DNA of 64,000 nt from Mobula hypostoma (GCF_963921235.1 NC_086104.1:130758001-130822000), one strand, 5' to 3'. Shown: positions 1 to 48,957, counted from the first letter of the stretch. Numbers and translations: made by a program. Notes: generated by a model from the sequence alone, not told the origin.

Positions 1-329
1 CAGAAGAGATTCATGGAAATTAGTATTCGACCACTATTATTAATATTTTTATAACAACTTTAATCATCATTTAGTTTAATAGAGTGGAATTACAATTGCA
101 CATAAACATCTATTTGAGTGCCTATTTATTTTCTATATTATCTCAATGTGCACTTGTGAATGTACAAATTAATATAGATTTACTCACATAAAAAATGGAA
201 AAGGTTATATATGTAAAAAAAGTTTGTGTATTACTTGTGAATACCTTATCCAAATAAAAATAAAATTTTTAAAAAAGGGGTAAAAAGAAGGCTATTAGAC
301 AAATGCTGGCAAATGGGACTGTGCCTGAT

Positions 330-1539: not shown

Positions 1540-2075
1540 CAAGTTTATTGTCATTTAACTATATACATGTGTTTACCATCAATGGTTTCTGCGGACCAGG
1601 GCATAAAGCACAATAGTACACATAACACACATGTAACACACAATAACTTAGGAAAGCTAGGATAACATCTACAGCTGAATGAGGCATAAATAAGCTAAGT
1701 AAAGTGCATAAATTAAATATTGCAAGGTACAGAACAGATTAACTTCTGATACAATGAGGCAGGGAGTTCAGACGCCTAATGGCCTGAAGAAAGAAACTGT
1801 TTCCCATGCTGACCATTCTTGTTTTTATGCATCAGAGTTTCCCAGCTGATGGTGGAAAGTCAAAGAGGATGCTGGATGGATGGTGGTGGGGGGGGGGCTG
1901 CGGATGGAGCCTTGATTATACTAAGGGCCCTGCATATGGAGAGCTCCTGATAAATATCCCCGCTGCATGGTAAGGAGACCCCAGTGATGCTGTCAGCCGT
2001 GCTCACAGCCCTTTGTAGGGACTTCTAGTCTCATGCTCGGCTGTTCCTACACCAGATGGAAATCCAACTTGATGA
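1540..2075 (-). mobile_element. Rex1/Babar LINE, 3' part (continues at 8334-8900)
   Basis: C-terminal coding remnant (GNSFF..AIRRLNSLP) and (cttga)n tail; reading continues into 8334-8900. Confidence 0.7.
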
Positions 2076-2307
2076 GGATCAAGGGGGGTGCTGTAGTAGT
2101 CTGGTGGACTGACCCCTACCTTGCTGAGGCCAGGCAACAACTCTCAGACACCTCCTCTTACTTACTCCCGGAACAGGATCCCATTAGGCAGCACCAGGCC
2201 CTTTTCACCCACACCTTATTAACTCTGGGGATCTCCCATCCACTGCCACCAATCTCAGAGTTCCCTTACCTCGCACCTCCTGTTTCTACCGCCTACCCAA
2301 GATCCAC

Positions 2308-2631
2308 GAATACAAAATACTCTGCAGATGCTGGGGTCAAAGCAACACTCACAACACGCTGGAGGAACTCAGCAGGTCAGACAGTCATCAACTCATCGTT
2401 TCCATGGATGACTGATGAAGGGTTCCGGCCCGAAACGTCAACTCATCGTTTCCACTGATGCACCTGGAACCTGCCAGCCTTCTCCTTCCCACCCTCCCCC
2501 CACCTTCTTTACAGGGCCTCTGCCCCTTCCCTCTTCAGTCCTGACGAAGGGTTCCAGCCCAAAACATCAACTCATCGTTTCCACAGATGCTGCCCGACCT
2601 GCTGAGTTCCTCCAGCATGTTGTGAGTGTTG
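2308..2631 (+). mobile_element. pLTR-derived non-autonomous mini-element with two tandem hammerhead cores
   Basis: Inverted termini; cores at 2412 and 2541; TSD ccaagatc(c/t)ac at 2297-2307 and 2632-2642, inside the Penelope RT. Confidence 0.75.
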
Positions 2632-2920
2632 CCAAGATCTACAAAATTGCCTGTCCAAGTAGACTCATTACTTCAGCTTGTTCCTGTCCCACTGAACTTA
2701 TATCTGCATACCTCGACTCTGTTTTATCCCCCGCAGATCAGTTCCTTCCTACCTACACCCGAGACACTTCACACACTCTGGATCTTTTCAATGATTTCAA
2801 GTTCCCTGGCCCCCGTCATCTTATTTTTACTATGGATGTCCAGTCCCTATACACCTCCATCCCCACCAGGAAGGCCTCAAAGCTCTCCATTTCCTTCTAG
2901 ATAACATACCCAACTCACAA

Positions 2921-5900
2921 ACATAGAATCATAGAAAACCCTCAGCACAATACAGGCCCTTCAGACCACAATACTGTGCCGAACATGTACTTACTTTAGA
3001 AATTACCTAGGGTTACCCACAGTCCTCTATTTTACTAAGCTCCATGTACCTATCCAGGAGTCTCTTAAAAGGCCCTATTGTATCTGCCTCCACCACTGCT
3101 GCTGGCAGCCCATTCCACGCACTCACCACTCTCTGCATAAAAAACTTACCCCTGACATCTCCTCTGTACCTACTTCTAAGCACCTTAAAACTGTGCCCTC
3201 TCATGTTAGCCATTTCAGCCCTGGGAAAAAGCCTCTGACTATTCACACGATCAATGCCTCTCATCATCTTATACACCTCTATCAGGTCACCTCTTATCCT
3301 CCATCACTCCAAGGAGAAAAGGCCAACTTCACTCAACCTATTCTCATAAGGCATGCTCTTCAATCCAGGCAACATCCTTGTAAATTTCCTCTGCACCCTT
3401 TCCATGGTTTCCACATCCTTCCTGTAGTGAGGTGACCAGAACTGAGCACAGTACTCCAAGTGGGGTCTGACCAGGGTCCTATATAGCTGTAACATTACCT
3501 CTCGTCTCTTGAACTCAATCCCATGATTGATGAAAGCCAATGCACCATATGCTTTCTTAACCACAGAGTCAACCTGCGCAGCAGCTTTGAGCGTCCTATG
3601 GACTTGGACCCAAGATCTTTCTGATCCTCCGCACTGCCAAGAGTCTTACCATCCATACTATATCCTGCCATCATATTTGACCTACCAAAATTAACCACCT
3701 CACACTTATCTGGGTTGAACTCCATCTGTCACTTCGCAGCCCAGTTTTGCATCTTATTGATGTCCCATGCAGGATATGACCCATCTACAACCACTCTTTG
3801 CCTTCTGTAGGCAAGCCAATTCTGGATCTACAAAGCAAGGTCCCCTTGGATCCCATGCCTCCTATGCCTCCTTACTTTCTCAATAAGCCTTGCATGGGGT
3901 ACTTTGTCAAATGCCTTTCTGAAATCCATATACGCTACATCTACTACTCTACCTTCATCAATGTGTTTAGTCACATCCTCAGAAAATCCAACCAGGCTTG
4001 TAAGGCATGACCTAACTTTGACAAAGCCATGCTGACTATTCCTAATCATACTATGCCTCTCCAAATCTTCATAAATCCTGCCTCTCAGGATCTTCTCCAT
4101 CAACTTACCAACCACTAAAGTAAGACTCACTGGTCTATAATTTCCTGGGCTATCTCTACTCCCTTCTTGAATAAGGGAACAACATCTGTAACCCTCCAAT
4201 CCTCTGGAACCTCTCCCGTTCCCATTGATAATGCAAAGATCTTTGCCAGAGGCTCAGCAATCTCCTCCCTCGCCTCCCACAGTAGCCCGGGGTACATCTC
4301 ATCCGGTCCCGGTGACTTATCCAACTTGATGCTTTCCAAAAGCTCCGGCACATCCTCTTCCTTAATATCTACATGCTCAAGCTTTTCAGTCGCTGTAAGT
4401 CATCACTACAATCACCAAGGTCCTTTTCCGTAGTGAATACTGAAGGAAAGTATTCATTAAGTACCCTCCGCTACCTCCTCCTGTTCCATACACACTTTTC
4501 CACTGTCACATTTGATTGGTCCTATTCTCTCATGTCTTATCCTCTTGCTCTTCACATACTTATAGAATGCCTTGGGGTTTTCCTTAATCCTGCTCACCAA
4601 GGCCTTCTCACAGCCCCTTCTGGCTCTCCTAATTTCATTCTTAAGCTCCTTCCTGCTGGCCTTATAATTTTCTAGATCTCACTCATTACCTAGTTTTTTG
4701 AACCTTTCATAAGTGTTTCTTTTCTTGACTAGATTTTTTACAGCTTTCATACACCATGGTTCCTGTACCCTACCAACTTTTCCCTGTCTCATTGGAACGT
4801 ACCTATGCAGAACGCCACGCAAATATCCCCTGAACATTTGCCACATTTCTGCCGTACATTTCCCTGAGAACATCTGCCCCCAATTTAAGCTTCCAGGTTC
4901 CTGCCTGATAGGGCCATATTTCCCCTTACTCCAATTAAATGTTTTCCTGACTTGTCTGTTCCTATCCCTCTCCAATGCTATGGTAAAGGAGATAGAATTG
5001 TGATCGCTATTTCCAAAATGCTCTCCCACTGAGAGACCTGACACCTGACCAGGTTCATTTCCCAATACCAGATCAAGTACAGCCTCTCTTCTTGTAGGCT
5101 TATCTACATATTGTGTCAGAAAACCTCCCTGAACACACTTAACAAACTCCACCCATCTAAACCCCTCACTCTAGGGAGATGCCAATAAATATTGGGGAAA
5201 TTAAAATCTCCCATCACGACAACCCTGTTATTATTGCATTGTCCCAGAATCTGTCTCCCTATCTGCTCCTCAATATCCCTGTTACTATTGGGTTATCTAT
5301 AAAAAAATCTAGTAGAGTTATTCACCCCTTCCTCTTTCTAACTTCCAACCTCAGAGACTCAAGAGACAATCCCTCCATGACTTCCTCCTTTTCTGCAGCC
5401 ATGACACTATCTCTGATCAGCAGTGCCACGCCCCCACCTCTTTTGCCTCCCTCCCTGTCTTGACCCCTTTCTGAAACATCTAAAGCCTGGCACTCTAAGT
5501 AGCCATTCCTGCCCCTGAGTCATCCAAGTCTCTGTAATGGCCACAATGTCATAACTCCAAGTATTGATCCATGCTGTAAGCTCATCCGCTTTGTTCATGA
5601 TACTCCCTGCATTAAAATAGACACATCTCAAACCATTAGTCTCTATAACCTGCCTATTCTCCCTCTCACACTGCCTACAAGCTTTCTCTATTTGTGAGCC
5701 AACCACCCCATCATCCTTCTCTTCAGTTCAGTTCCCACCTCCCAGCAATTCTAGTTTAAATTCTCCCCAATAGCCTTAGCAAACCTCCCTGCCAGGATAT
5801 TGTCCCCCTCGGATTCAAGTGCAACACATCCTTATTGTACAGGTCACACCTACACCAAAAGAGGTCCCAATGATCCAGAATTCTGAATCCCTGCCCCCTG

Positions 5901-6317
5901 CTCCAATCCCTCAGTCACACATTTATCCTCCACCTCACTCTATTCCTATACTCACTGTCGCAGTAGTCCCGAGGTTACTACCCTTGTGGTGCTGCTTCTC
6001 AGCTTCTTTCCTAACTCCCTGTAGTTTGTTTTCAAGACCTCCTGCCTTTTCCTGCCTATGTCATTGGTACCAATATGTACCACGATCTCTGGCTGTTCAA
6101 CTTCCCACTTCAGGGTATCGCGGACACGATCAGAAACATCCCGGACCCTGGCACCTGGGAGGCAAACCACCATCTGTGCTTCTTTCCTGCATTCACAGAA
6201 TCGCCTGTCTGACCCCCTAACTATAGAGGGTCCCCTGTCACTTCTGCCATCCTCTTCCTTTCCCTACTCTTCTGAGCCACAGGGCCAGACTCTGTGCCAG
6301 AGACACGGCCACTGTCG
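2921..6317 (-). mobile_element. Long CR1 LINE (ORF1 esterase-like, APE, RT), frameshifted
   Basis: CLPGARVRD/VHIGTNDIG, DIVAITETW, GNYRPVSLT, MDFRKAFDKVPH, RPHLEYCAQFWSP; ctatg tail near 2925. Confidence 0.9.
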
Positions 6318-7208
6318 TTTCCTTCCACCACTACTCTCCTCCATCTGGCAGAACCGGTCCTCAATCTCAATAATTTCTCTTTCGGCTCCTCCCATTTCCT
6401 CCAAACCAAAGGTGTAGCCATGGGTACTCACATGGGTCTCAGCTATGCCTACCTTTTTGCCAGCTACGTCGAACAGTCTATGTTCCAAGCCTACACCGGT
6501 ATATCTCCCCAACATTTCCTATGCTACATTGACGACTGAATTGGTGCTGCTTCCTGCACACACACGGAACTCGTCGACTTTATCCATTTTGCCTTTAACT
6601 TCCACCCTGCCCTCAAGTTTACCTGGTTCATTTCCGACAGCTCCCTCCTTTTCTCGGTCTCTCTGCTCTGTTTCTGGAGACAGCTTATCAACTGATATCT
6701 TTTATAAACCCACCAATTCTCACAGCTACCTGGACTAAATCTCTCCCCCACCCTGTCACTTGTAAAAATGCCATTCTCTTCTCTCAGTTCCTCTGTCTTC
6801 ATCACATCTGCTCTCAGGATGAGGATTTTCATTCCAGAACTAATGAGATGTCCTCCTTCTTCAAAGAAAGAGGCTCCCTTCCTCCACCATCAACGCTGCC
6901 CTCATGTGCAACTCTTCCATTTTGCGCACACCAGCCCTCACAATATCCTCCCACTGTCACACCAGGGATAGGGTTCCTCTTGTCCTCACCTACCACACCA
7001 CTAGCCTCTGCGTCCAGCACATAATTCTCGGTACATTCCGCCATCTCCATAGGATCCCACCACCAAGCACTTCCCTTCCCCCTGCTTTCTGTTTTCTACA
7101 GAGATCACTCCCTACGCAACTCCCTTGTCCATTCTCCCTCCTGGTACTTATCCTTGCAAGTGGAACAAGTGCCACACCTGTCCCTACACCTCCTCCCTCA
7201 CTTCTATT

Positions 7209-7670
7209 CCCTCCAATCTTCCGTCCGTGGACTCACTTTACACTGCACGCTGTCGGAGCAGTGCTGCCAGGATAATCAAGGACACAACCCACCCAGCCAA
7301 CACACTTTTCGTCCCTCTTCCCTCCAGGAGAAGGTTCAGGAGCTTGAAGACTCAGATGGCCAGATTTGGGAACAGCTTCTTTCCAACTGTGATAAGACTG
7401 CTGAACAGATCCTGACCCAGATCTGGGCCATACCCTCCAAATATCCGGACCTGCCTCTCGGTATTTTTTTGCACTACCTTACTTCCCATTTTTCTATTTT
7501 CTATTTATGATTTATAATTTAAATGTTTAATATTTACTAATTTTAACTATTTTTAATATTTATTATTTGTAATCCAGGGAGTGTGAAGCACAGAATCAAA
7601 TATCGCTGTGATGATTGTACGTTCTAGTACCAATTGTTTGGCGACAATAAAGTATAAAGTATAAAGTATT
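7209..7670 (+). mobile_element. Rex1/Babar LINE 3' fragment
   Basis: SAARIIKDTTHPANTLFVPLPSRRRFRSLK...GNSFFPTVIRLLN; (taaag)n-like tail; same subfamily as 56646-57470. Confidence 0.8.
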
Positions 7671-8333
7671 CAAGGCCCTAACAGTTCTTCCAGATGAGGT
7701 GACACTTCACCTGTTTCCAGTGCTCTCAATGTGGCTCCTGCATATCAGTGAAATGCGATGTGGACTGGGAAACCACTTTGCTGAGCTTCTACGCTCAGTC
7801 ACCAGAAAAATGGGATCTCCCGGTGGCCACCTATTTTAATTCTATTCTGGCACATCAGTCCATGGCCTCCTCTACTGCCGTGATGTGGCCACACTCAGAC
7901 TGGAAGAGCAAAACCTTATATTCTGTCTGGGTAGCCCACAACCTGATGGCATGAACATCGATTTCTGAAACTTCCAGTAATTGCCTCCCCCATCCCATCC
8001 TTCACCATTCCCATTTCTCTCTCTCACCTTATCTCCTTTCCTGCCCATCACCTCCCTCTGGTGCTCCTCCCCCTTCTCTTTCCTCTCCTATCAGATTCCT
8101 CCTTCTCCAATCAACTTCCCAGCTCTTTATTTCATCCTGCCCCCTCTCCCAGCTTCATCTAGCACCTACTACCTTGTACTTCTTCTTCCAATCCCCCCAC
8201 CTTCTTGCTCTAACTTCCCATCTTTTGTTTCCAGTCCTGATGAAGCGTCTCAGCCCGAAACGTTGACCGTTTACTCTTTTCCATAGATGCTGCCTGGCCT
8301 GCTGAGTTCCTCCAGCCTTTGGTGTGTGTTGCT

Positions 8334-8900
8334 TGGAGATGCAATTTGTCAGGATGCTCTCAATGGTGCTCCTAGAAAATTCAGTTAAGATGGGGAGAGG
8401 GGAAGACTTGCTTCCCTCAATCTCCTTAGGAAGTGGAGGTGCTGTTGTACCTTCTTGTTCAGGGAGGTGATATTAAGGGACCAGATGACATCATCCGTGA
8501 CGTGAACACCCAGGAATTTGGTGCACGAAAGTCTCACTGTGGAGGAGCCATGTATATGCAGAGAGGGATGGTTCTTCTGTATCTTCCTGAAGCTCACGAT
8601 GGTTTCTTTGGTCTTCTCCAAGTTCAGGGTCAGGTTGTTCTTCTCACACCAATCCACCAGCCGCTCCTATTCCTCTCTGCACTCGGACTCATCATTGTTG
8701 TTGATGAGGCCAACCACTGCTGTGTCATCTGCAAACTTGCACTGTTGACACTGTTTGAGCTGAATCCTGTGACACAGTCATGTGTCGGCAGTGTGAGCAC
8801 ACAGCCCTGCAGAGCGCCAGTGCTTAGCATAATGAGTCTAGAGACATTGCTGCCCACACGGACTGACTGCGGCCTTCTGTTAAAAAGTCCGGGATCTGAT
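8334..8900 (-). mobile_element. Rex1/Babar LINE RT-end fragment
   Basis: WCEKNNLTLNLEKTKE...KFLGVHVTDD...QQHLHFLRRL. Confidence 0.8.
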
Positions 8901-9661
8901 TCCAGAGACAAGTTACAGACTTTTCCTCTAAAATCTTTACTATCAAATTTGTGTACTTTCCCATTATTCTGACAATGTTACATCACGATTCAGATCACAC
9001 TCTGGACTTGTTCTGTTTGTAACAATGCCCTTCAGTCTGAGACATTTCAACCATGTGTAATTCTCTGGCCAGCCTGTTACTTTGCTTCACAGGTAATTTT
9101 TCAACTTGGCAGAGGCACTGCAAAGCCAAGTAATGGTACGGTAGCATTCATTCTCTCAGCCTCCATGAACATTTAGGTGACAGAGCAAATTGTGCTTCTA
9201 AACTGCCCTTCAAGCTTCCCTAACCAGTGGAAGGTTTGGGAGGCACAGTCTGAGTGGTTCTGGGAGCTTTTCACTAATCAGTTGTATGATCTTTCAAGCA
9301 GCTTTCAGCCAATCCAACAGTTCACTTCTCCTATAACTTGGAGACACAGGGTGGCAACACTCCTGCAATCCTGAATCAGAACCAGAATTGGGTTGACTGT
9401 CACTGACATATGTTGTGAAATGTGCTGTTTTGTGGAAGCAGTACAGTGCAAGACTTAAACATTACCATAAGTTACAAAAATAGATAAGTAGATAGTGCAA
9501 AAGAGTAATCGTGAAGTAGTGTTCATGGGTTCAGGGACCGTTCAGAAATCTGATGGCAGAGGGGAAGAAGCTGTTACTGAAACGTTAAGTGTGGGTCTTC
9601 AGGATCGTGTATCTCCCCTGTGATAGTACTAATGAGATGAGGGCAGGTCACGGGTGGTGAA

Positions 9662-9909
9662 TGTTACGTTTTGTGACTCCAATACATAAAACCAATCGAA
9701 AGAAAAACAAGGGAGACTGAGAGATGTGCATAACCTTCATTTTTACTTTTAGCAAGGCACACACTAATGACGTGATGGTGTGATGACGTATGCCATTCAT
9801 GTACTTTTACATATGACCTACAAAGCACATGTTAACAACAAAGAATGCTGACTCAAACAATATATTTACAATATTACTCAAATATAACTAAAATATTAAA
9901 TACACAACA
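9662..9909. mobile_element. Solo LTR of the Gypsy family at 21740-25370
   Basis: TG...CA ends, gtga(a/g) TSD, shared gtgtgatgacgtatg and ttactcaaatat blocks. Confidence 0.75.
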
Positions 9910-9942
9910 GTGAGGGTCCTTAATGCTGGGTGTTGCCTTTTG

Positions 9943-10254
9943 TTGGCGCGTGGCCAAGTGGTTAAGGCATTCGTCTAGTGATTTGAAGGTCGCTAGTTCG
10001 AGCCTTGGCTGAGGTAGCATGTGTGTCCTTGAGCAAGGCACTTAACCACACATTGCTCGGTGACGACACCGGTGCCGAGCTGTATGGGTCATAATGCCCT
10101 TCCCTTGGACAACATCAGTGGCCTGGAGAGGGGAGACTTGCAGCATGGGCAACTGCCGGTCTTCCATACAACCTTGCCCAGGCCTGCGGCCTGGAAACTT
10201 TCCAAGGCGCAAATCCATGGTCTCACGAGATTAACAGATGCCTATTAAAAAAAA
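9943..10254 (+). mobile_element. tRNA-derived CORE-like SINE with RTE-like 3' tail
   Basis: A box tggccaagtgg, B box gttcgagcc, CORE-like gtgtccttgagcaaggcacttaacc, poly(A); 9-bp TSD tgccttttg at 9934-9942 and 10255-10263. Confidence 0.8.
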
Positions 10255-10789
10255 TGCCTTTTGAAGACGTGGGAAGGATTGTGCCCGTGATAGAGCTGAC
10301 TGAGTCTTCCACCCTCTTTCAATCCTGCAAACTGCAGCCTCCATACCAGGCTATGATATAGCCAGAATGCTCTGCACCGTGCATCTGTCGAAATTTGTAA
10401 GAGTCTTTGCTGGCATAGAAAATCTCCTCTAACTTCTCAAACTGCTTCTTTGTTATTGTGTCAACGTGTTAGGTCCAGGATAGGCTTTCTGAGATATTAT
10501 GCCTCAATGGAAAGTGGTTGAGTCCACTTGTCTGGGACTCCACCTATCACTGTAAAGATTCACTTCCACCACCAGCCACAGAACACTGCCTGCAGTGTGT
10601 TCCTTCTAGGAAATGCTCTGCAGTCACTTACACAAGCAACATAGGAACACCATGCTCTCCAAGTTGCACACGACCCTCACTCACCGATGTATGACTATTT
10701 GTCTTTGTTGCTGGTTCCCAATACTGAAATTCCTTTGCCTACAGCACTGTGTGAATACCTTCATCAGGTTTACAGCAGTTCTAGAATGA

Positions 10790-11660
10790 GGCAACCCAAT
10801 GTATTCAAGGTCAGCGGGACAGGTAGTGTCAAGGAAGCAGGGAGTCTACAGAAGGACTTTAATAGATTAGGAGAATGGGCAAAGAAGAGGCAGATGGAAT
10901 ACAGTGTATGGTCAGGCATTTTTGTCGAAGGACTAAAAGCATAGACTACTTTCTAAACAAGCAGCAATTCAGAAATTAGAAGTGCAAAAGGACTTGGGAG
11001 TCCTAGTAAAGGTTTCTCTAAAGATTAACTTACAGGTTGAGTCAGTGTGAGGAAGGCAAATGAAACAATAACATTCAGTTTGAGAGGACTAGAATATAAA
11101 AGCAATGATGTAATTCTCAGGCTTTCTAAATCATCAGTCAGACCATGTTTGGAGTATTGTGAGCAGATTGGGACCCCTTCTCTCAGGAAGGATGTGCCGG
11201 TTTTGGAGAGGGTCCAGAGGATGTCATGAGAATGATTCCGGGATTAGCGTGTGAAGAGTGTTTGATAGCTCTAGGTCTATACTCTCTGGAGTTTAGAAGA
11301 ATGAGAGGCGATCTCATTGAAACCTATTGAATACTGAAAGGTCGAGACAGAATGGACATGCATATGATGTTTTCAATAGTGGGAGAGTCTAGAACCAGAG
11401 AACACAGCCTCATAATACAAGGGCATCCGTTTAGAACACGGATAAGGACGAATTTCTCTAGCGAGAGGGTGATGAATCTGTGGATTTCATTATTACAGAT
11501 AGCTATGAAATCTAAGACATTGCGTATATTTAAAATGATAGGTGTTTGATTAGTAAGGGCATCAAAGGTTACAGGAGGAGGCAGGAGAAAGAGGTTGAGG
11601 GGGTAATAAATCAGCCACAATGGAATGGCGGAACAGATTGATGGGATGAATGCCCCAATC
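10790..11660 (+). mobile_element. CR1 LINE 3' fragment
   Basis: RPCLEYCEQ...VLERVQR and a CR1 3' UTR. Confidence 0.8.
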
Positions 11661-11934
11661 CTGCTCTTATGTCTTATGGTCGATGGTAATCAGGGAATAG
11701 AAATAAATGCTGGCCCTTACCAAAATGCCAATACCCCAGAAAATTAATAAATAAAATATACACCGTTTGAGTAACTACTGGATCTTCACATCAGCCAAGA
11801 CACACAGTCCTTCACCTGATTGTTGGTGCCTGATTTTAATACTCACTGTGGCTCTTCAACTTGATAGGTCACTGGATCCATCCCAAAAACTCCACTCTTA
11901 ACAAGAGCATCATGGACCTCCGGATGGCCAACAG

Positions 11935-12266
11935 CAGGAGTGATTGATAAGTTTGTGGCCTTGGGTAGAAGGAGATGAGTTATACAGCTCTCATTACATG
12001 CACGTGCAGTTCAACTCTTTGAGTGAAAATGCAGAAAGTTTGAAGTTAATAACTCATCTCCTTCTACCTTAGGCCATGAACTTATCAATCACCCCTGCTG
12101 TGGGCCACTTTCTGGAGGTCCAAGACACCAACTTCTACAAAGAAGGGATCCGTATGCTCCATAGCCACTGGACTAAGTGTGTAAATGTAGGAAAAATAAA
12201 TGTGCTAGGTTTTCTGGAACTGACTCCTTCTACCGTTGGCCATGAACTTATCAATCACCCCTCGTA
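11935..12266. mobile_element. Tc1/mariner-derived MITE
   Basis: Inverted gtgattgataagtt termini ending cccctcgTA; internal FYKEGIRMLHSHWTKCV transposase tail; an extra internal TIR copy. Confidence 0.7.
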
Positions 12267-12849
12267 CTGAGCAAAACCATTTCACATTCTTTAGCGCCTT
12301 TCCATACCAGGGACAATTCTGCACCCTGTCTCACACATCCAATCAAGGACGCAGGAGAGATTTTTAAAAATTCTCAGACAGTGAATTATATTCAACAGAA
12401 AAGATGGTCCTTTCAACCAGTCTTGGGACAGGCAAGAGAGGAGATTGCTGGTCCTTTACAAAGATCTTTGCATCCTCTCTAGCAACAGACAAGAACTGGA
12501 GACAATATTGTTCTTTTGTTGATGAAGGGTAATTGGGATAATTTTAGAAGTTATATGTGGGTGAAACTCATGTCACTGTTGAAGCTTCATTTGTTGAAGC
12601 TATTAGAGAGGATTCTCAGTTCTAAGAATTCCTCGCATTTGAAAAAAATCATGAGCTTATTAGAAATAGTCAGCTTGGCTTTACGTGGGGCCAGTCACGA
12701 TTTAGAAATGTAATTGAGTGTTTTGAGAAGGTGTTGAAGACGGTTGATGAGGATAAGGCAGTGGATATTGTCTATATCAACTTTTGTAACACATTTGACA
12801 ATGTCCCCCACAGTGGGATGATCAACAACAAAGATTCCCAACATGGGAT

Positions 12850-13017
12850 CCACCTATCGCCTGTCACTTCTCTCTACCCTCCCCCTACCTTTCAAATCTG
12901 CTGCTCAGCTTTTTTTCTCCAGTCCTGCCGAAGGGTTTCGGCCCGAAACGTCGACTGTACTTTTTTTCCACAGGTGCTGCCTGGCCTGCTGAGTTCCTCC
13001 AGCATTTTGTGTGTGTT
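12850..13017 (+). mobile_element. Penelope pLTR fragment with a mutated hammerhead core (CTGCCGA)
   Basis: ccagtc-CTGCCGA-agggtttcggccc-GAAAC-GTC-gactg followed by the family tail gctgcctggcctgctgagttcctccagc. Confidence 0.75.
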
Positions 13018-13119
13018 ATTCTACCTGGAGATCTGTGACCAGTGGTGTTTCACAGAGAGCGGTGCCAGGAGCTCTGTTGACAATATGATCAGTTGTGTGG
13101 CTCTACAAAAAGCAGGGTT

Positions 13120-15395
13120 AAACATAGAACATAGAATAGTACAGTACAGTACAGGCCCTTCAGCCCACAATGTTGTGCTGACCCTCAAATCCTGCCTCCC
13201 ATATAAGCCCCCACCTTAAATTCCTCCATATACCTGTCTAGTAGTCTCTTAAACTTCACTAGTGTATCTGCCTCCACCACTGACTCAGGCAGTGCATTCC
13301 ACGCACCAACCACTCTCTGAGTAAAAAACCTTCCTCTAATATCCCCCTTGAACTTCCCACCCCTTACCTTAAAGCCATGTCCTCTTGTATTGAGCAGTGG
13401 TGCCCTAGGGAAGAGGTGCTGGCTATCCACTCTATCTATTCCTCTTATTATCTTGTACACTTCTATCATGTCTCCTCTCATCCTCCCTCTCTCCAAAGAG
13501 TAAAGCCCTAGCTCCCTTAATCTCTGATCATAATGCATACTCTCTAAACCAGGCAGCATCCTGGTAAATCTCCTCTGTACCCTTTCCAATGCTTCCACAT
13601 CCTTCCTATAGTGAGGTGACCAGAACTGGACACAGTACTCCAAGTGTGGCCTAACCAGTTTTATAGAGCTGCATCATTACATCGCGACTCTTAAACTCTA
13701 TCCCTCGACTTATGAAAGCTAACACCCCATAAGCTTTCTTAACTACCCTAGCCACCTCTGAGGCAACTTTCAGGGACCAGTGGACATGTACCCCGAGATC
13801 CCTCTGCTCCTCCACACTACCAAGTATCCTGCCATTTACTTTGTACTCTGCCTTGGAGTTTGTCCTTCCAAAGTGTACCACCTCACACTTCTCCGGGTTG
13901 AACTCCATCTGCCACTTCTCAGCCCACTTCTGCATCCTATCAATGTCTCTCTGCAATCTTTGACAATCCTCTGCACTATCTACAACACCACCAACCTTTG
14001 TGTCGTCTGCAAACTTGCCAACCCACCCTTCTACCCCCACATCCAGGTCGTTAATAAAAATCACGAAAAGTAGAGGTCCCAGAACAGATCCTTGTGGGAC
14101 ACCACTAGTCACAATCCTCCAATCTGAATGTATTCCCTCCACCACCACCCTCTGCCTTCTGCAGGCAAGCCAATTCTGAATCCACCTGGCCAAACTTCCC
14201 TGGATCCCATGCCTTCTAACTTTCTGAATAAGCCTACTGTATGGAACCTTGTCAAATGCCTTACTAAAATCCATATAGATCACATCCACTGCACTACCCT
14301 CATCTATATGCCTGGTCACCTCCTCAAAGAACTCTATCAGGCTTGTTAGACACGATCTGCCCTTCACAAAGCCATGCTGACTGTCCCTGCTCAGACCATG
14401 ATTCTCTAAATGCCTATAGATCCTATCTCTAAGAATCTTTTCCAACAGCTTTCCCACCACAGACGTAAGGCTCACTGGTCTATAATTACCCGGACTATCC
14501 CTACCACCTTTTTTGAACAAAGGGACAACATTCGCCTCCCTCCAATCCTCCGGTACCATTCCCGTGGACAACGAGGACATAAAGATCCTAGCCAGAGGCT
14601 CAGCAATCTCTTCTCTCACCTCGTGGAGCAGCCTGGGGAATATTCCATCAGGCCCCAGGGACTTATCTGTCCTAATGTATTTTAACAAATCCAACACCTC
14701 CTCTCCCTTAATATCAACATGCTCCAGAACATCAACCTCACTCATATTGTCCTCACCATCATCAAGTTCCCTCTCATTGGTGAATACCGAAGAGAAGTAT
14801 TCATTGAGGACCTCGCTCACTTCCACAGCCTCCAGGCACATCTTCCCACCTTTATCTCTAATCCGTCCCACCTTCACTCCTGTCATCCTTTTTTCTTCAC
14901 ATAATTGAAGAATGCCTTGGGGTTTTCCTTTACCCTATTCGCCAAGGCCTTCTCATGCCCCCTTCTTGCTCTTCTCAGCCCCTTCTTAAGCTCCTTCCTT
15001 GCTACCCTATATTCAATAGACCCATCTGATCCTTGTTTCCTAAACCTCATGTATGCTGCCTTCTTCCACCTGACTAGATTTTCCACCTCACTTGTCACCC
15101 ATGGTTCCCTCACCCTACCACTCTTTATCTTCCTCACCAGGACAAATTTATCCCTAACATCCCGCAAGAGATCTCTAAACATCGACCACATGTCCATAGT
15201 ACATTTCCCTGCAAAAACATCATCCCAATTCACACCCGCAAGTTCTAGCCTTATAGCCTTTCCCCAATTAAAAATTTTCCTGTCCTCTCTGATTCTGTCC
15301 TTTTCCATGATAATGCTAAAGGCCAGGGATCGGTGGTCACTGTACCCCAGATGCTCACCCACTGACAGATCTGTGACCTGACCCGGTTCATTACC
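13120..15395 (-). mobile_element. Relatively young CR1 LINE, 5'-truncated, inserted in an older + strand CR1 (about 12330-16470)
   Basis: 411-aa open RT stretch 13651-14886 (QGSVLGPLLF, KFADDTK); adjoining ORFs joined by frameshifts; (ttctatg)n tail. Confidence 0.92.
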
Positions 15396-16818
15396 TAGTA
15401 CTACATAATGTTGTTTGAGATAAATATAAATGCTCGCTTGACATGTAGATGAGTGGATTAGTAAGTTTGCAGCCGACACAAAAAAACATAGAATTGCGGA
15501 GAGTGAACAAGGTGTTCAAAATGTAGAGCAGAATATAGATATGGGATGGGAAATGACAGAATCAGCTTAATCCAAGGATTTGATCATGTTGTGCTTTTGG
15601 AGATTTAATGGGGAAAATTATACCATTAATAGCACAACCTTTAAGAGCACCGATGTACTGAAGGATCATGGGGTCCAAGTGCATAACTCCCAGAAAGTAA
15701 CAACACAAGTAGAAAGGATGGTTAAAAGGAAAACATACAACTTGCTTGCTTTCAGCAGTCAGAGCACGGAGGATATGAATAAAGAAATCAAGTTGCAGCT
15801 GTATACAACTGGTTCGGGCGCACGTGGAGTATTGGACACATTATAAGAAGTATGTGGAGGCTTTGGGGAGAGTGCAGAAGACATTTAACAGGGTACTGTA
15901 TGGATTGGAGGTTATTTGCTAGAAGAAAAGGTTGGACAAACTTGTGTTGTTTTCTCTGGAGTATCACAGGCTGAGGGGAGACCTGACTAGAGGTTTACAA
16001 AAATATGAAGGGCAAACAGTTAAAATCTGTTTCCCAGCGGAGATATGTCGAATACTTAAGGACCTAGGGAGAGTTTAATGGAGATGCGCGTGTAAGTTAT
16101 TTTACACAGACAGGTGCCTGGAGCACGTTGCCGGTGGGAGTTGGCAGAAGCTCAAGTCGAGTTGAATTGATTGTCATGTGGACATGTGTGGTAAGGTGAA
16201 GTACAATGCCAAACTTGCTTGCAGGGCATCAAAAACATGTAGGTACAGACAACAGACTGAACATTAACCATGCATAAAATTATACCATTCAGTGGAAAAT
16301 GAAGACTGTGCAAAATTGCAATGAAAAACTAAGACACAATTGAAGTTGACGGCATGTTGACATGATAGAGACGGTTAAGGGGCATTTAGAAGGAGGGGTT
16401 ATGGATCATGCAAAGGCAGATAGGTTCAGGTTATCTTGGGATCATGTGCTGAAGGGCTTGTTTCTGTGCTTACTGCTGCTTGATGTCCTGTTGGAGAGAA
16501 TCTCTCTTGGGTCCTGCTGGCTGCTTTTGTGAAAATGTTCCACTAAAGCCATTATTTTAAGTCCTTATAGGAAATGGCCTGTGGCAGTAATAAATTCACT
16601 GGCTTTTCACCACTTCTTCTGTTCCCATTCCTTTTTTCTCTGTCCTCTAGGACCTTGGTGGTATCATTTGTTGAAATAAACAGTTCCCAGCGCAGAGAAA
16701 ACACTGCCCCCTCTCAAACTTCAGCACGAGGAAATCTGTAGATGCTGGAATTTCAAGCAACACACATAAAAGTTGCTGGTGAACGCAGCAGGCCAGGCAG
16801 CATCTATAGGAAGAGGTA

Positions 16819-16856
16819 CAGTCGACGTTTCGAGCCGAGACCCTTCGTCAGGACTA
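16819..16856 (-). ncRNA. Minimal type-I hammerhead ribozyme, intact core
   Basis: Reverse complement tagtc-CTGACGA-A-GGGTCTCGGCTC-GAAAC-GTC^gactg. Confidence 0.7.
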
Positions 16857-18112
16857 ACTGAAAGAAGAGATAGTAAGACATTTGAAAGTGGGAGGGGGAG
16901 GGGGAGATCCAAAATGATAGGAGAAGACAGGAGGGGGAGGGATGGAGCCAAGAGCTGGACAGGTGATTGGCAAAAGGGATATGAGAGGATCATGGGACAG
17001 GAGGCCTAGGGAGAAAGAAAGGGGAGAGGGGAAGCCCAGAGGATGGGCAAGGAGTATAGTGAGAGGGACAGCGGGAGAAAAAGGAGAGAGAGAGAAAAAA
17101 ATTAATAATAATATGTAAATAAATAACGCATGGGGTATGCATCTCTCCCATTTCACGCACATCTGCTCTCACCCCATCCTCCCGCCACCCCACTAGGAAT
17201 AGGGTTCCCCTTGTCCTCACCTACCACCCCACCAGCCTCCGGTCCAACATGTAATTCTCCGTAACTTCCGCCACCTCCAACGGGATCCCCCCACTAAGCA
17301 CATCTTTCCCTCCCCCCCCACCTCTGCTTTCCGCAGGGATTGCTCCTTACGCGACTCCCTTGTCCATTCGTTCCCCCCCCATCCCTTCCCACCGATCTCC
17401 CTCCCGGCACTTATCCTTGTAAGCGGAACAAGTGCTACACGTGCCCTTACACTTCCTCCCTCACCACCATTCAGGGCCCCAGACAGTCCTCCCAGGTGAG
17501 GCCACACTTCACCTGTGAGTCGGCTGGGGTGATATACTGCGTCCGGTGCTCCGGATGTGGCCTTCTATATATTGGTGAGACCCGACACAGACTGGGAGAT
17601 CGTTTCGCTGAACACCTACGCTCTGTCCGCCAGAGAAAACAGGATCTCCCAGTGGCCACACATTTTAATTCCACGTCCCATTCCCATTTTGATATGCCTA
17701 TCCACAGCCTCCTCTACTGTAAAGATGAAGCCACACTCAGGTTGGAGGAACACCACCTTATATTCCATCTGGGTAGCCTCCAACCTGATGGCATGAACAT
17801 TGACTTCTCTAACTTCCGTTAGTGCCCCATCTCCCCTTCGTACCCCATCCGTTATTTATTTATTATTATTTTCTCTCTCTCCCTTTTCTCCCTCTGTCCC
17901 CCTCACTATACCGCTTGCCCATCCTCTAGGTTTTTCCCCCCTCCCCCTTTTCTTTCTCCCTGGGCCTCCTGTCCCATGATCCTCTCATATCCCTTTTGGC
18001 AATTGCCTGTCCAGCTCTTGGCTCCATCCCTCCCCCTCCTGTCTTCTCCTATCATTTTGGATCTCCCCCTCCCCCTCCCCCTCTCAAATCTCTTACTAGC
18101 TCTTCCTTCAGT

Positions 18113-18150
18113 TGGTCCTGATGAAGGGTCTTGGCCCGAAACGTCGACTG
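18113..18150 (+). ncRNA. Minimal type-I hammerhead ribozyme, intact core; predicted cleavage after 18145
   Basis: tggtc-CTGATGA-A-GGGTCTTGGCCC-GAAAC-GTC^gactg (stem I has G:U pairs). Confidence 0.7.
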
Positions 18151-18639
18151 TACCTCTTCCTAGATGCTGCCTGACCTGCTGCGTTCACCAGCAACTTTGA
18201 TATGTGTCCCTTCTCAAACTTGCTCACTTGCATCAGAATCCACCAGATGTCACACCACCAAGTGAAGCCCCCCAATTCTCTTACCCCTCACACTTGGTCA
18301 CTCATTTCTTGCTACCTCGGCAGTAATATCTCACACTCAACGCTGATATGGCATCCACCGGTTCAACAGAACAAGCTGGCAGGGCAGCGCAAAGGAAACA
18401 GCCTTTAATGCAGGTTCATTTTCAGCAGGGCCCCATACCACAATGCAGCAGAAGTCCTACACGTACTCTGCATGGTCCTTATAGGCAAATGAACCCTCGA
18501 ATGGTACTATACACTCTTCTGCTGATGTAAATATTTGTTGATCGGTAAGTATAACTTTATGGCAATTCATGACGGTGCAAAGTCTGTTCCAGTGGTCACT
18601 GGAGCCGTGCCAATTAACACGGTCTTTCAGTCATAACAT

Positions 18640-19060
18640 TGCAGAAGTCCGACCCTCTCTCGTACGGCCAGCGTCCCGAGAGCGCGCGCGCAAGGAAGTG
18701 CCTCGACTTCCGTTTGGGCAGAGGCGCGTGCGCGCCCGCGCGGTCCGGGATTCTCGGCTGCGGAGCGTGCGCGCGCGCGCGGCCGGGTCGCCGGTCTCGC
18801 GTTAAAGGCCCCGCCGCCCGCCGAGGACGAGCTGCTGGTCGCTACGGGGCTCAGGCTGCTGGGGATGACACTCGAATCCATGCGGTCGGCCTCGTCTTCC
18901 TCATAACCGAACTATTTAACTCTGTACGTTAAACCACCGCTGGGTTTGATCTTATCATCGTTAAGTTTCGCCCTTACTCGTCAGATCTGTCTCGCTGTTA
19001 ATTATGTTTCACTTTCATCTTAAATTTCACTTGGAATATTGATTTAGTGTTGACACGCGT
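18640..19060 (+). promoter_or_regulatory. CpG-island promoter, probable POLM TSS and first non-coding exon
   Basis: Only CpG-dense non-repeat island in the window, about 1.5 kb upstream of the ATG exon. Two opposed ETS/GABP cores (GGAAGTG 18694-18700, ACTTCCG 18706-18712) and an NRF1-like GCGCGTGCGC at 18724-18733. Confidence 0.75.
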
Positions 19061-19211
19061 GTTTTTGTAGGAGTTGGTATGTTGAATGTCAGGTCGTATT
19101 CCCCACAAGCGAAGTTGCCTTCCATGTTACTTATTTACATAATACTTGAGCAACACACATCAAAGTTGCTGGTGAACGCAGCAGGCCAAGCAGCATCTAT
19201 AGGAAGAGGCG

Positions 19212-19249
19212 CAGTCGACGTTTCAGGCCGAGACCCTTCGTCAGGACTA
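19212..19249 (-). ncRNA. Minimal type-I hammerhead ribozyme, intact core
   Basis: Exact inverted copy of 20002-20039. Confidence 0.75.
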
Positions 19250-20001
19250 ACTGAAGGAAGAGTGAGTAAGGGATTTGAAAGTTGGAGGGGGAGGGGGAGA
19301 TGCAAAATGATAGGAGAAGACAGGAGGGGGAGGGATAGAGCCGAGAGCTGGACAGGTGATAGGCAAAAGGGGATACGAGAGGATCATGGGACAGGAGGTC
19401 CGGAAAGAAAGACGGGGGGGGGGGTGACCCAGAGGATGGGGAAGAGGTATATTCAGAGGGACAGAGGGAGAAAAAGGAGAGTGAGAGAAAGAATGTGCAT
19501 AAAAATGAGTAACAGCTGGGGTACGAGGGGGAGGTGGGGCCTAGCGGAAGTTAGAGAAGTCAATGTTCATGCCATCAGGTTGGAGGCTACCCAGACGGAA
19601 TATAAGGTGTTGTTCCTCCAACCTGAGTGTGGCTTCATCTTTACAGTAGAGGAGGCCGTGGATAGACATGTCAGAATGGGAATGGGATGTGGAATTAAAA
19701 TGTGTGGCCACTGGGAGATCCTGCTACCCCATCTATTACTTATTTTTATGCACACATTCTTTCTCTCACTCTCCTTTTTCTCCCTCTGTCCCTCTGAATA
19801 TACCTCTTGCCCATCCTCTGGGTCCCTTCCCCCCCCCGTCTTTCTTTCCGGACCTCCTGTCCCATGATCCTCTCGTATCCCCTTTTGCCTATCACCTGTC
19901 CAGCTCTTGGCTCTATCCCTCCCCCTCCTGTCTTCTCCTATCATTTTGGATCTCCCCCTCCCCCTCCAACTTTCAAATCCCTTACTCACTCTTCCTTCAG
20001 T

Positions 20002-20039
20002 TAGTCCTGACGAAGGGTCTCGGCCTGAAACGTCGACTG
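20002..20039 (+). ncRNA. Minimal type-I hammerhead ribozyme, intact core; predicted cleavage after 20034
   Basis: tAGTC-CTGACGA-A-GGGTCTCGGCCT-GAAAC-GTC^GACTg; stem I agtc/gact, palindromic ACGT helix III. Confidence 0.75.
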
Positions 20040-20406
20040 CACCTCTTCCTACAGATGCTGCCTGGCCTGCTGCATTCACCAGCAACTTTGTGTGTTGCTT
20101 GAATTTCCAGCATCTGCAGAATTCCTGTTGTTTGCATAATACTTAATGTTGTTCTGAGTCCTGGTGAAGGATTTCTGCCTGACATGAAGATTATTGATTT
20201 CCCTCCATAAGATGCTGCCTGACCTGCTGATTTCATTCGCTTTCTCTGTGTGTGTTGCTCCGATTTACGGTATCTTCAGTCTTATCTTGTGTCTCATGCT
20301 GTACCTTGTGAAGTTTCTTTCCTGAAATTGACCCAAGCCCTTCTTTCAGCAGTAATACTCTACCTTTGCCTTCCTCAGGTCAGTGAGCTCCTGTGTCAGC
20401 TGCACC

Positions 20407-48957
<28,551 letters not shown>

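What the first reader, a model, noticed from the sequence alone, without database searches (positions are those of the whole stretch)
16722..20134. POLM CpG promoter enclosed by two mirror-image Penelope insertions: four pLTR copies in -,+,-,+ order
Seen: element A (16722-18207, 14-bp TSD) and element B (19148-20134, 10-bp TSD) are independent insertions with their 3' ends facing the CpG island. Each carries an inverted pLTR, giving four similar copies of about 370 bp in alternating orientation. The promoter therefore sits inside an inverted pair (A-right/B-left, about 0.94 kb apart) and inside two direct pairs. Same-strand intact ribozymes flank it on both strands: + cuts after 18145 and 20034 (1889 nt between), - cuts after 19217 and 16824 (2393 nt between). 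Inference: (i) ectopic recombination could invert or delete the POLM promoter; (ii) read-through RNA could be excised as a retrozyme-like linear or circular RNA carrying the promoter; (iii) open chromatin may have attracted both insertions.
Basis: partly seen in the sequence, partly recalled or inferred. Interest (0 to 1): 0.7.

Follow-up and report, generated by a model that had tools for sequence, protein, structure and literature searches.

The report
Dead Penelope retrotransposons flanking POLM promoter
Two (in fact three) dead copies of an abundant Penelope-like jumping gene landed independently on either side of the CpG-island promoter of the DNA polymerase mu gene in a devil ray; the layout is real but is the ordinary footprint of this element class, and nothing shows that it does anything.

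Summary

A and B are 5'-truncated Penelope-like elements. Each is a GIY-YIG endonuclease remnant plus terminal repeat, with an inverted upstream copy carrying a roughly 40-bp "tail". This architecture is published.

The sawfish (Pristis) orthologous locus has empty sites for A, for B and for a third, older fragment (20155-20283). It also keeps the CpG island about 340 bp upstream of the POLM start codon. So these are lineage-specific insertions at a conserved POLM promoter.

The -,+,-,+ order is automatic, because the arms of such elements always point tail-out.

- **(i) Recombination:** unsupported. A and B arms are only 86% identical, and the haplotype is colinear with sawfish.
- **(ii) Ribozyme-excised RNA:** disfavoured. 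Every sense ribozyme is preceded by, and in the lowest-energy fold fully paired with, its antisense copy, and these minimal ribozymes cleave poorly.
- **(iii) Open-chromatin targeting:** possible but untestable from one locus.

The scan already noted this family elsewhere in the same genome, and follow-ups called it ordinary. I agree.

The parts
16708..16721 (.). Left copy of element A's target-site duplication (CCCCTCTCAAACTT)
   Evidence: Read. It matches 18208-18221 at 13/14 positions. Sawfish has a single copy at the empty site.
16722..17137 (-). A-left: inverted, 5'-truncated terminal-repeat (pLTR) copy. Its outer ~38 bp (16722-16759) are the 'tail', which A-right lacks.
   Evidence: 91.3% identical to A-right. 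The tail and the inverted copy are described in PMC8557442 and PMC11167929.
16821..16851 (-). Minimal hammerhead motif; predicted cut after 16824
   Evidence: core nucleotides read.
17138..17840 (+). Body of A: 3' remnant of the Penelope ORF. A GIY-YIG endonuclease ORF runs 17340-17822, with a C-x4-C-x2-C motif upstream of GIY-YIG. There is no reverse-transcriptase part.
   Evidence: ORF; Pfam PF01541, E 2.7e-4, 21.6 bits against a 22.6 cut-off; nearest atlas clusters are GIY-YIG, with RVT_1+GIY-YIG animal proteins in the structure search; homologues down to E 2e-48, e.g. in a skate.
17841..18207 (+). A-right: 3' terminal repeat of A's body, with the short (tail-less) end at 18207
18118..18148 (+). 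Minimal hammerhead motif (CTGATGA variant, G10.1-C11.1); predicted cut after 18145
18208..18221 (.). Right copy of element A's target-site duplication
18511..19020 (+). CpG island, probable POLM promoter and first non-coding exon
   Evidence: 55 CpGs, o/e 1.35. Conserved in sawfish at L001 9191-9660, about 340 bp upstream of the POLM ATG. A cross-species transcript 5' end maps into the sawfish island and weakly to window 18764-18835.
19138..19147 (.). Left copy of element B's target-site duplication (CATAATACTT)
   Evidence: empty site in sawfish.
19148..19523 (-). B-left: 3' terminal repeat of B's body, with the short end at 19148 facing the island
   Evidence: 95.7% identical to B-right.
19214..19244 (-). 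Minimal hammerhead motif (G10.1-U11.1 wobble); predicted cut after 19217
19524..19724 (-). Body of B: the last ~200 bp of the endonuclease ORF (56-aa ORF 19541-19711)
   Evidence: aligns to A 17640-17840.
19725..20134 (+). B-right: inverted 5'-truncated terminal-repeat copy with a ~39-bp tail at its outer end. It lies in sense to POLM.
20007..20037 (+). Minimal hammerhead motif (G10.1-U11.1 wobble); predicted cut after 20034
20135..20144 (.). Right copy of element B's target-site duplication
20155..20283 (+). Third, older Penelope 3'-end fragment (C0), with a decayed hammerhead and a tail; absent in sawfish
   Evidence: 72-92% matches at 20210-20279; read.
20407..20613 (+). First coding exon of POLM (residues 1-69)
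   Evidence: PDB Pol mu, E 2e-8; 100% to the Mobula hypostoma Pol mu protein; 11 coding exons up to 48954.
37593..37693 (-). Solo 101-bp copy of the same young family (hammerhead plus short end) with a 16-bp target duplication, in a POLM intron

Best explanation
A and B are two independent, non-autonomous, 5'-truncated insertions of an abundant endonuclease-bearing Penelope-like retrotransposon family. They landed about 300 bp upstream and about 130 bp downstream of the CpG island (18511-19020) that serves as the POLM promoter. A third, older fragment (C0) sits beside B. Each insertion has the standard Penelope footprint: a body (endonuclease remnant plus 3' terminal repeat) joined head-to-head to an inverted terminal-repeat copy that carries the optional ~40-bp tail, all inside one staggered-cut target duplication. 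This is what you expect when both nicked target strands prime reverse transcription. Because such arms always point tail-out, any two such insertions give four copies in -,+,-,+ order, with one hammerhead motif per arm. The copies are passengers. A lies upstream of the promoter. B and C0 lie between the island and the start codon, most likely in a 5'-UTR intron. The hammerheads are the family's ordinary minimal, dimer-dependent motif and are masked by their own antisense arms in any read-through RNA. Shown: the anatomy, the independence of the insertions, the empty ancestral sites, and promoter conservation. Inferred: the two-sided priming mechanism, tolerance and neutrality, the intron position, and ages of roughly 40 million years (A) and 20 million years (B).
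For: The two target duplications differ in length and sequence (14 bp and 10 bp). Arms within an element are more alike (A 91.3%, B 95.7%) than arms between elements (86%), so these were two events at different times. Endonuclease evidence: a GIY-YIG ORF with C-x4-C-x2-C. The hammerhead motif occurs 5 times against 0 expected. The inverted 5'-truncated copy, the 30-40-bp tail at one end and a hammerhead in the terminal repeat are published features of these elements (PMC8557442). Cleavage and extension of both target strands, and two internal reverse-transcription start sites that explain the tail, are also published (PMC11167929). Opposite-strand hammerhead pairs 100-700 bp apart are described in PMC4209133. 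The sawfish orthologue is colinear, with single-copy empty sites for A, B and C0 and with a conserved island upstream of the POLM ATG. POLM exons were mapped. The family is dense here, with 9 related loci in 64 kb. Antisense masking of every hammerhead is shown.
Against: Three Penelope insertions within about 1.2 kb around the only strong CpG island of the window is unlikely for a single window (P about 5e-4 for three or more, 0.7% for one on each side). Some insertion bias, or a local hot spot (B and C0 lie within ~25 bp), may therefore add to chance. No RNA, methylation or population data were available, so neutrality is assumed rather than shown. The reverse-transcriptase part is absent from A and B, so assignment to a Penelope clade rests on the endonuclease and the terminal repeat alone. 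The Pfam GIY-YIG score is 1 bit under the curated cut-off.
Confidence: 0.85

Rival explanations
1. Insertion bias: the family's endonuclease and reverse transcriptase prefer open, nucleosome-poor promoter flanks, or a local AT-rich hot spot. On this reading the clustering of A, B and C0 around the island is not chance. This is compatible with the best explanation for everything else.
For: Three of the 9 Penelope loci in the window lie within about 600 bp of the single strong island (P about 5e-4). B's target duplication abuts C0's. In three junctions, a Penelope 3' end abuts (GT)AAGT. Another first-stage note reports a Penelope palindrome between two CpG islands in the same genome (unchecked).
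Against: The locus was selected post hoc. With about 0.15 loci per kb, roughly 0.7% of islands would be flanked on both sides by chance, which is on the order of a hundred promoters in a vertebrate genome. Six other loci in the window are nowhere near an island. I found no published promoter preference for these elements. Frog retrozyme and terminal-repeat monomers are reported as evenly spread.
Confidence: 0.2
2. Element B acts as a long RNA hairpin inside the POLM 5'-UTR intron (or 5' UTR). Its ~375-bp arms would fold into double-stranded RNA, a likely substrate for editing or dicing, and could mildly modulate POLM expression or splicing.
For: B lies between the island and the ATG at 20407. 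Its + strand RNA folds into a hairpin of -823 kcal/mol. A cross-species capped transcript has only a 163-nt 5' UTR. Its aligned part matches the sawfish island (L001 9407-9514), about 490 bp from the ATG in that genome, against about 50 nt in the mRNA, so an intron is likely.
Against: There is no transcript evidence from this species. I could not fix the splice sites. There is no evidence of any effect, and the gene is intact with all 11 coding exons.
Confidence: 0.15
3. One reading: read-through RNA is cut by the same-strand hammerheads and released as a linear or circular RNA of 1889 nt (+) or 2393 nt (-) that carries the promoter sequence.
For: Core hammerhead nucleotides are present in all four arms, and same-strand pairs exist. 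Two copies on one RNA could in principle form the dimeric ribozyme proposed in PMC4209133.
Against: In every modelled read-through RNA, each hammerhead is 29-31 of 31 nt paired with its antisense copy, and the antisense arm is always made first. The one exception is a transcript that starts inside A, where A-right stays local. Minimal Penelope hammerheads showed no monomer activity and only low dimer activity in vitro (PMC4209133). An anole element gave no RNA-seq ends at the ribozyme site, and cleavage was not needed for insertion (PMC11167929). No Rfam hammerhead model matches. Animal retrozymes are tandem units of a few hundred nt, not 2-kb spans of host DNA. Nothing shows transcription across A towards the promoter.
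Confidence: 0.03
4. One reading: the arms mediate ectopic recombination that inverts (A-right with B-left) or deletes (direct pairs) the POLM promoter as a recurrent structural polymorphism.
For: Both inverted and direct arm pairs of about 370 bp enclose the island.
Against: Identity between the elements is only 86%, and the longest identical runs are 34-53 bp. From arm divergence (K2P 0.094 and 0.044) the elements have coexisted for a long time. The assembled haplotype is colinear with sawfish across all three segments, so no inversion has occurred. Deleting the promoter of a DNA-repair polymerase would probably be selected against.
Confidence: 0.04
5. Assembly artefact: the inverted arms or the duplicated flanks arise from mis-joined reads.
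For: Complex tandem and inverted Penelope insertions are known to trouble assemblies (PMC8557442).
Against: The target duplications are precise, the sawfish has exactly matching empty sites, the arms have diverged at 4-9% rather than being identical collapsed copies, and the scan reports the same architecture at many other loci of this genome.
Confidence: 0.02

Closest known systems
Endonuclease-bearing Penelope-like elements with the Zn-finger-like linker (Neptune/Nematis type), as described by Arkhipova 2006 and Craig et al. 2021 (PMC8557442)
   Same: C-terminal GIY-YIG endonuclease preceded by C-x4-C-x2-C. Terminal repeat with a hammerhead motif. Heavy 5' truncation. An inverted 5'-truncated copy at the 5' end. 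A 30-40-bp tail at one end only. Target duplications of variable length (10, 14 and 16 bp here).
   Different: A and B contain no reverse transcriptase, so the clade cannot be placed by the usual reverse-transcriptase phylogeny. Both inverted arms begin at the same repeat position (TACCCCAT), a regularity I did not find described.
Minimal hammerhead ribozymes of metazoan Penelope elements (Cervera and De la Pena 2014, PMC4209133)
   Same: CUGAYGA and GAAA boxes. An unpaired A between positions 9 and 10.1. A helix II of 4 bp starting G10.1-C11.1 in the A copies. A 4-5 bp helix I. No helix III, with palindromic ACGU at positions 15.1-16.1 implying dimers. Pairs occurring on opposite strands a few hundred bp apart.
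   Different: Both B copies and the solo copy carry G10.1-U11.1, from CpG-to-TpG change at C11.1-G12. Activity is untested.
Animal non-LTR retrozymes (tandem hammerhead repeats that yield small circular RNAs)
   Same: They derive from Penelope terminal repeats and carry the same type of hammerhead (bioRxiv 10.64898/2026.07.22.740005).
   Different: Retrozymes are head-to-tail tandem units of a few hundred nt. Here the same-strand ribozymes are 1.9-2.4 kb apart, are separated by host promoter DNA, and each is faced by an antisense copy.
Poseidon element of Anolis (PAc) studied in vitro (Frangieh et al. 2024, PMC11167929)
   Same: Cleavage and extension of both target strands, and two adjacent reverse-transcription start sites, explain tail-out arms with and without the tail.
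   Different: It belongs to a different clade (Penelope/Poseidon), and its hammerhead overlaps the ORF start. Here the hammerhead lies about 295 bp downstream of the ORF stop codon and about 60 bp before the tail-less 3' end.

Membership tests
Penelope-like element (endonuclease-bearing) | GIY-YIG endonuclease domain at the C-terminus of the single ORF | tested here: met
   ORF 17340-17822. Pfam PF01541 at E 2.7e-4, 21.6 bits, 1 bit under the cut-off. Nearest atlas clusters are GIY-YIG, and the structure search on the top hit reaches RVT_1+GIY-YIG animal proteins. Homologues down to E 2e-48.
Penelope-like element (endonuclease-bearing) | Penelope/telomerase-type reverse transcriptase upstream of the endonuclease | tested here: inconclusive
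   A and B are 5'-truncated and hold no reverse-transcriptase sequence. An older related copy at 6276-8335 has a YIDD-containing ORF fragment, but Pfam called no RVT_1.
Penelope-like element (endonuclease-bearing) | Pseudo-LTR, often with an inverted 5'-truncated copy, and a 30-40-bp tail at one end only | tested here: met
   Arms. The tails at 16722-16759 and about 20096-20134 are absent from the body ends at 18207 and 19148. Definition taken from PMC8557442.
Penelope-like element (endonuclease-bearing) | Target-site duplication of variable length flanking the whole unit | tested here: met
   14, 10 and 16 bp. Empty sites in sawfish.
Neptune/Nematis-type Penelope elements | CX2-5CxxC Zn-finger-like motif upstream of GIY-YIG | tested here: met
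   CKRNKCYTC in the ORF. Motif definition from PMC8557442. Clade not confirmed by phylogeny.
Hammerhead ribozyme (minimal type I of Penelope elements) | Conserved core C3 U4 G5 A6 N7 G8 A9 ... G12 A13 A14 A15.1 ... U16.1 H17 | tested here: met
   All four arms and the solo copy.
Hammerhead ribozyme (minimal type I of Penelope elements) | Helices I and II, with a G10.1-C11.1 closing pair and a bulged base after A9 | tested here: met
   Read. Helix I is 4-5 bp. Helix II is 4 bp (GGGU/GCCC) after a bulged A. The closing pair is G-C in A-left and A-right, and a G-U wobble in B-left, B-right and the solo copy.
Hammerhead ribozyme (canonical, Rfam models) | Helix III hairpin in cis, and a match to an Rfam hammerhead covariance model | tested here: not met
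   No hammerhead hit at gathering score or at E<=10. Positions 15.2 and 16.2 are adjacent (ACGU), so helix III can form only between two copies.
Hammerhead ribozyme | Self-cleavage at the predicted site | not testable with these tools
   This needs in vitro transcription or RNA-end mapping. Published minimal Penelope hammerheads cleave weakly, and only as dimers (PMC4209133).
Animal non-LTR retrozyme | Head-to-tail tandem units of a few hundred nt, each with a hammerhead | tested here: not met
   Same-strand motifs are 1889 and 2393 nt apart, with host DNA and antisense copies between them. No tandem array was found here.
CpG-island promoter of POLM | CpG island just upstream of the first coding exon, conserved at the orthologous place | tested here: met
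   (o/e 1.35). Sawfish island at L001 9191-9660, ATG at 10001, with colinear alignment.
CpG-island promoter of POLM | Transcription start mapped inside the island in this species | tested here: inconclusive
   There is only a cross-species transcript with a SMART-oligo 5' end. It aligns to the sawfish island and weakly to window 18764-18835.

The most novel reading that the evidence does not exclude
This Penelope family integrates preferentially into nucleosome-poor CpG-island promoter flanks. Three independent insertions lie within about 1.2 kb here, two of them within 25 bp. It also leaves fixed-length inverted arms, because the second-strand copy runs off at a defined 5' end of the template RNA. 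If both held genome-wide, they would be an undescribed target preference and a new mechanistic detail of Penelope integration.
Probability: 0.12. Interest if true: 0.5.

Novelty: new member of a known kind. Interest (0 to 1): 0.2.

Why it matters
As it stands, this is a clean, well-dated example of known Penelope insertion architecture next to a conserved promoter. It is useful as annotation: POLM's 5' region in the devil ray grew from about 0.5 kb to about 1.6 kb through transposon insertions. It is also a caution that paired ribozyme motifs around a host feature do not imply ribozyme-defined RNAs. It would matter more only if a genome-wide test showed that these elements target promoters, or if RNA data showed cleavage or hairpin processing inside the POLM 5' UTR or intron.

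Tried and rejected
1. **Rfam hammerhead models:** no match at gathering score or at E<=10. The only hits were spurious miRNA-like matches to the purine-rich and pyrimidine-rich arms.

2. **Closest-relative test (Mobula birostris, Hypanus sabinus):** the genes were found, but the DNA could not be delivered because the files are too large. Hemitrygon and the shorter sawfish isoform were not on record.

3. **Other individuals:** I searched for contigs through ORFs inside the island, and for exon-1-sized proteins. Nothing was found.

4. **Splice sites of the presumed 5'-UTR intron:** I tried to fix them with a cross-species transcript. The last ~40 nt of its UTR could not be aligned, so the donor and acceptor remain guesses.

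5. **CpG retention in island-facing versus outward-facing arms:** there are only 15 informative sites and the pattern is mixed, so this is inconclusive.

6. **Pfam on the older copy's reverse-transcriptase-like ORFs:** no call.

7. **Literature on Penelope promoter preference:** nothing specific.

8. **Rejected: a single complex event producing both A and B.** The target duplications differ, A-to-B identity is 86%, and the within-element divergences are unequal.

9. **Rejected: the -,+,-,+ order as a meaningful pattern.** It is forced by the tail-out geometry.

Full report
**Observation**

The region was read directly and scanned for repeats, and the elements were blasted against the whole window. 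Four copies of one ~370-410-bp sequence are present:
- A-left, 16722-17137 (-)
- A-right, 17841-18207 (+)
- B-left, 19148-19523 (-)
- B-right, 19725-20134 (+)

The multiple alignment and pairwise statistics give 91.3% identity between the two A arms, 95.7% between the two B arms and about 86% between elements.

Element A is flanked by CCCCTCTCAAACTT and CCCTTCTCAAACTT (16708-16721 and 18208-18221; 13 of 14 identical). Element B is flanked by an exact CATAATACTT (19138-19147 and 20135-20144).

The pattern CTGANGA-N(8-30)-GAAACGTCGAC occurs five times in the window against zero in shuffles. There is one copy in each arm and one in a 101-bp solo copy at 37593-37693, which has a 16-bp duplication.

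A CpG island at 18511-19020 has 55 CpGs and observed/expected 1.35, against 0.30 for the whole window. It is the only strong island in 64 kb.

**What the elements are**

Between A's arms lies an ORF (17340-17822, +). It ends in a GIY-YIG domain (Pfam PF01541, E 2.7e-4, one bit under the curated cut-off) preceded by CKRNKCYTC, that is C-x4-C-x2-C.

Its nearest atlas clusters are eukaryotic GIY-YIG proteins, and the structure search on the top hit reaches animal proteins combining RVT_1 and GIY-YIG. Sequence homologues reach E 2e-48, for example in a skate.

B contains only the last ~200 bp of the same ORF, on the minus strand.

In each element the body's 3' end is short (18207 and 19148), and the opposite, inverted arm carries about 40 further bases (16722-16759 and about 20096-20134).

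Three published features of Penelope-like elements match this:
- Craig et al. [quoted passage not shown]
- They also describe the CX2-5CxxC motif as marking the Neptune and Nematis clades.
- Frangieh et al. 2024 (PMC11167929) showed that a purified Penelope-class protein cleaves and extends both target strands and starts reverse transcription at two adjacent internal sites, which accounts for the tail.

A and B are therefore ordinary, dead, 5'-truncated Penelope-like insertions. They hold no reverse transcriptase, so the clade is inferred from the endonuclease linker only.

**The -,+,-,+ order**

In an insertion of this type both arms have their 3' ends outward. The left arm is therefore always minus and the right arm always plus, whichever way the body points. 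Any two such insertions give -,+,-,+. The only free variable is the relative orientation of the bodies, and opposite orientations have a one-in-two chance.

**The ribozyme motifs**

All five copies have the hammerhead core, a bulged A after A9, a 4-bp helix II and a 4-5-bp helix I. They have no helix III: positions 15.1-16.1 read ACGU, a palindrome that can pair only with a second copy.

These are the traits of the minimal hammerheads that Cervera and De la Pena found in metazoan Penelope elements (PMC4209133). That paper also reported opposite-strand pairs 100-700 bp apart, no detectable cleavage by single motifs, and low cleavage by dimers.

No Rfam hammerhead model matches, even at E<=10. 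Both B copies and the solo copy have G10.1-U11.1 instead of G-C, from a CpG-to-TpG change. "Intact" therefore means "core nucleotides present", not "shown active".

**The gene and the promoter**

An ORF starting at ATG 20407 matches the N-terminus of DNA polymerase mu in the PDB (E 2e-8).

A representative search with a later exon and a follow-up search recovered elasmobranch Pol mu proteins. Local tblastn maps 11 coding exons from 20407 to 48954 on the plus strand. Identity is 100% in several exons to the Mobula hypostoma protein and about 97% to M. birostris.

Upstream of A the window is full of LINE-type reverse-transcriptase fragments, with no evident divergent gene.

The orthologous locus of the sawfish Pristis pectinata (L001) aligns colinearly with the window's unique segments:
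- Window 16066-16721 aligns up to L001 8768.
- Window 18209-18647 and 18680-19100 align to L001 8756-9204 and 9358-9834.
- Window 20294-20620 aligns to L001 9885-10214.

Sawfish has one copy of A's target. It has no B and no counterpart of window 20155-20283. It carries a CpG island (L001 9191-9660) about 340 bp upstream of its POLM ATG.

So the island is conserved at the POLM 5' end across batoids. A and B are lineage-specific insertions with precisely empty ancestral sites. The same holds for a third, older Penelope 3'-end fragment, C0 (20155-20283, decayed hammerhead, tail present). The segment between A and B has not been inverted in this haplotype.

A Logan transcript from another elasmobranch (L002) begins with a SMART template-switch oligo. 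Its GC-rich 163-nt 5' UTR aligns to the sawfish island and weakly to window 18764-18835. This places the transcription start in the island and makes a 5'-UTR intron likely. I could not fix the splice sites.

By this reading A lies about 0.5 kb upstream of the start site. B and C0 lie in the transcribed 5' region, with B-right's hammerhead in sense to POLM.

**Ages (rough inference)**

Arm-to-arm K2P is 0.094 for A and 0.044 for B. I assume the arms were identical at insertion. I scale by the roughly 0.4 substitutions per site between the Mobula and sawfish flanks (66-72% identity) over a split of very roughly 190 million years, a figure from my own knowledge and uncertain. That makes A a few tens of millions of years old and B about half that. 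C0 is older still.

**Inference (i): recombination**

Between elements the arms are 86% identical, with longest identical runs of 34-53 bp. That is poor substrate for homologous recombination. The arrangement has persisted through 4-9% arm divergence, and the haplotype is colinear with sawfish. Nothing supports structural alleles, and only population data could exclude them.

**Inference (ii): ribozyme-excised RNA**

I folded the candidate RNAs.
- B alone forms a hairpin of -823 kcal/mol.
- In the 1889-nt and 2393-nt "between cuts" RNAs, and in the full read-through RNAs of either strand, every hammerhead is 25-31 of its 27-31 nt paired with an antisense copy and makes no local pairs.
- The exception is a transcript that starts inside A, after A-left, where A-right's motif stays local.

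Because the arms are tail-out, the antisense copy is always transcribed before the sense ribozyme, on either strand. Local folding could win kinetically. But the motif also needs a second hammerhead copy 1.9-2.4 kb away, and published minimal Penelope hammerheads are weak. For the anole element, no RNA-seq reads ended at the ribozyme site and cleavage was dispensable. Retrozymes are tandem units of a few hundred nt, which this is not. I put this reading at about 3%.

**Inference (iii): targeting of open chromatin**

The window holds nine loci related to this family, about 0.15 per kb. Simulation gives these probabilities:
- 0.7% that a given island has an insertion within 600 bp on each side.
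- About 0.05% for three or more insertions.
- 0.07% when using only the three young copies.

That is locally striking, and B and C0 share a 25-bp spot. But the locus was picked because it looked striking. At 0.7% per island, roughly a hundred promoters per genome would look like this by chance. The scan's own notes show the family is everywhere in this genome, and they mention one other Penelope palindrome between CpG islands (unchecked leads). A comparison of CpG retention between island-facing and outward arms was uninformative. The question needs a genome-wide test.

**Verdict**

The special pattern is a geometric consequence of a published insertion mode. The three functional inferences are unsupported (i), disfavoured (ii) or untestable here (iii). 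Earlier follow-ups in this scan reached the same "sound but ordinary" view of this family at other loci, and I concur for this one.

New here are the empty-site proof from sawfish, the third insertion, the conserved promoter, the masking argument, and the observation that both inverted arms start at the same repeat position.

Noticed in passing
window 20155-20283 (+): A third, older Penelope 3'-end fragment with a decayed hammerhead (CTGGTGA..GACATGAAG) and a tail. Its left target duplication abuts B's right one, so two independent insertions lie within ~25 bp. It is absent in sawfish.
   Followed up: partly
window 17137 and 19725: Both inverted arms begin at the same repeat position (TACCCCAT, ~17 nt after the endonuclease stop codon), although the bodies are truncated at different points (703 against 200 bp of ORF). 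This suggests the second copy runs off at a defined 5' end of the template RNA.
   Followed up: no
window 16721/16722, 19147/19148, 37592/37593: At three junctions a Penelope 3' end abuts (GT)AAGT (AAGTTTGAG, AAGTATTATG, GTAAGTAATC on the element's strand). This may be a weak nick-site motif, but n=3 only.
   Followed up: no
window 2300-2640: A different Penelope family with a hammerhead variant (CTGATGA..GAAACGTC^AAC). Two units lie ~125 bp apart, next to an inverted tail fragment.
   Followed up: no
window 6276-8335: An older, longer copy related to A and B (72% identity). It has endonuclease remnants and an upstream ORF fragment ending in YIDD (reverse-transcriptase-like). Pfam made no call on it.
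   Followed up: partly
window 47403-47610: A 27-bp minisatellite, 7.7 copies, 86% matches, CpG-rich, inside a POLM intron.
   Followed up: no
window 19040-19090 and L001 ~9760-9810: The stretch between the island and B's site is unusually conserved between devil ray and sawfish (e.g. TGTAGGAxTTGGTATGTTGAAT, which contains a GGTATGT donor-like site). It may be the end of the non-coding first exon.
   Followed up: partly
window 1-16700: The intergenic region upstream of POLM is packed with LINE-type reverse-transcriptase ORF fragments on the minus strand (e.g. a 427-aa stop-free frame at 13654-14934).
   Followed up: no
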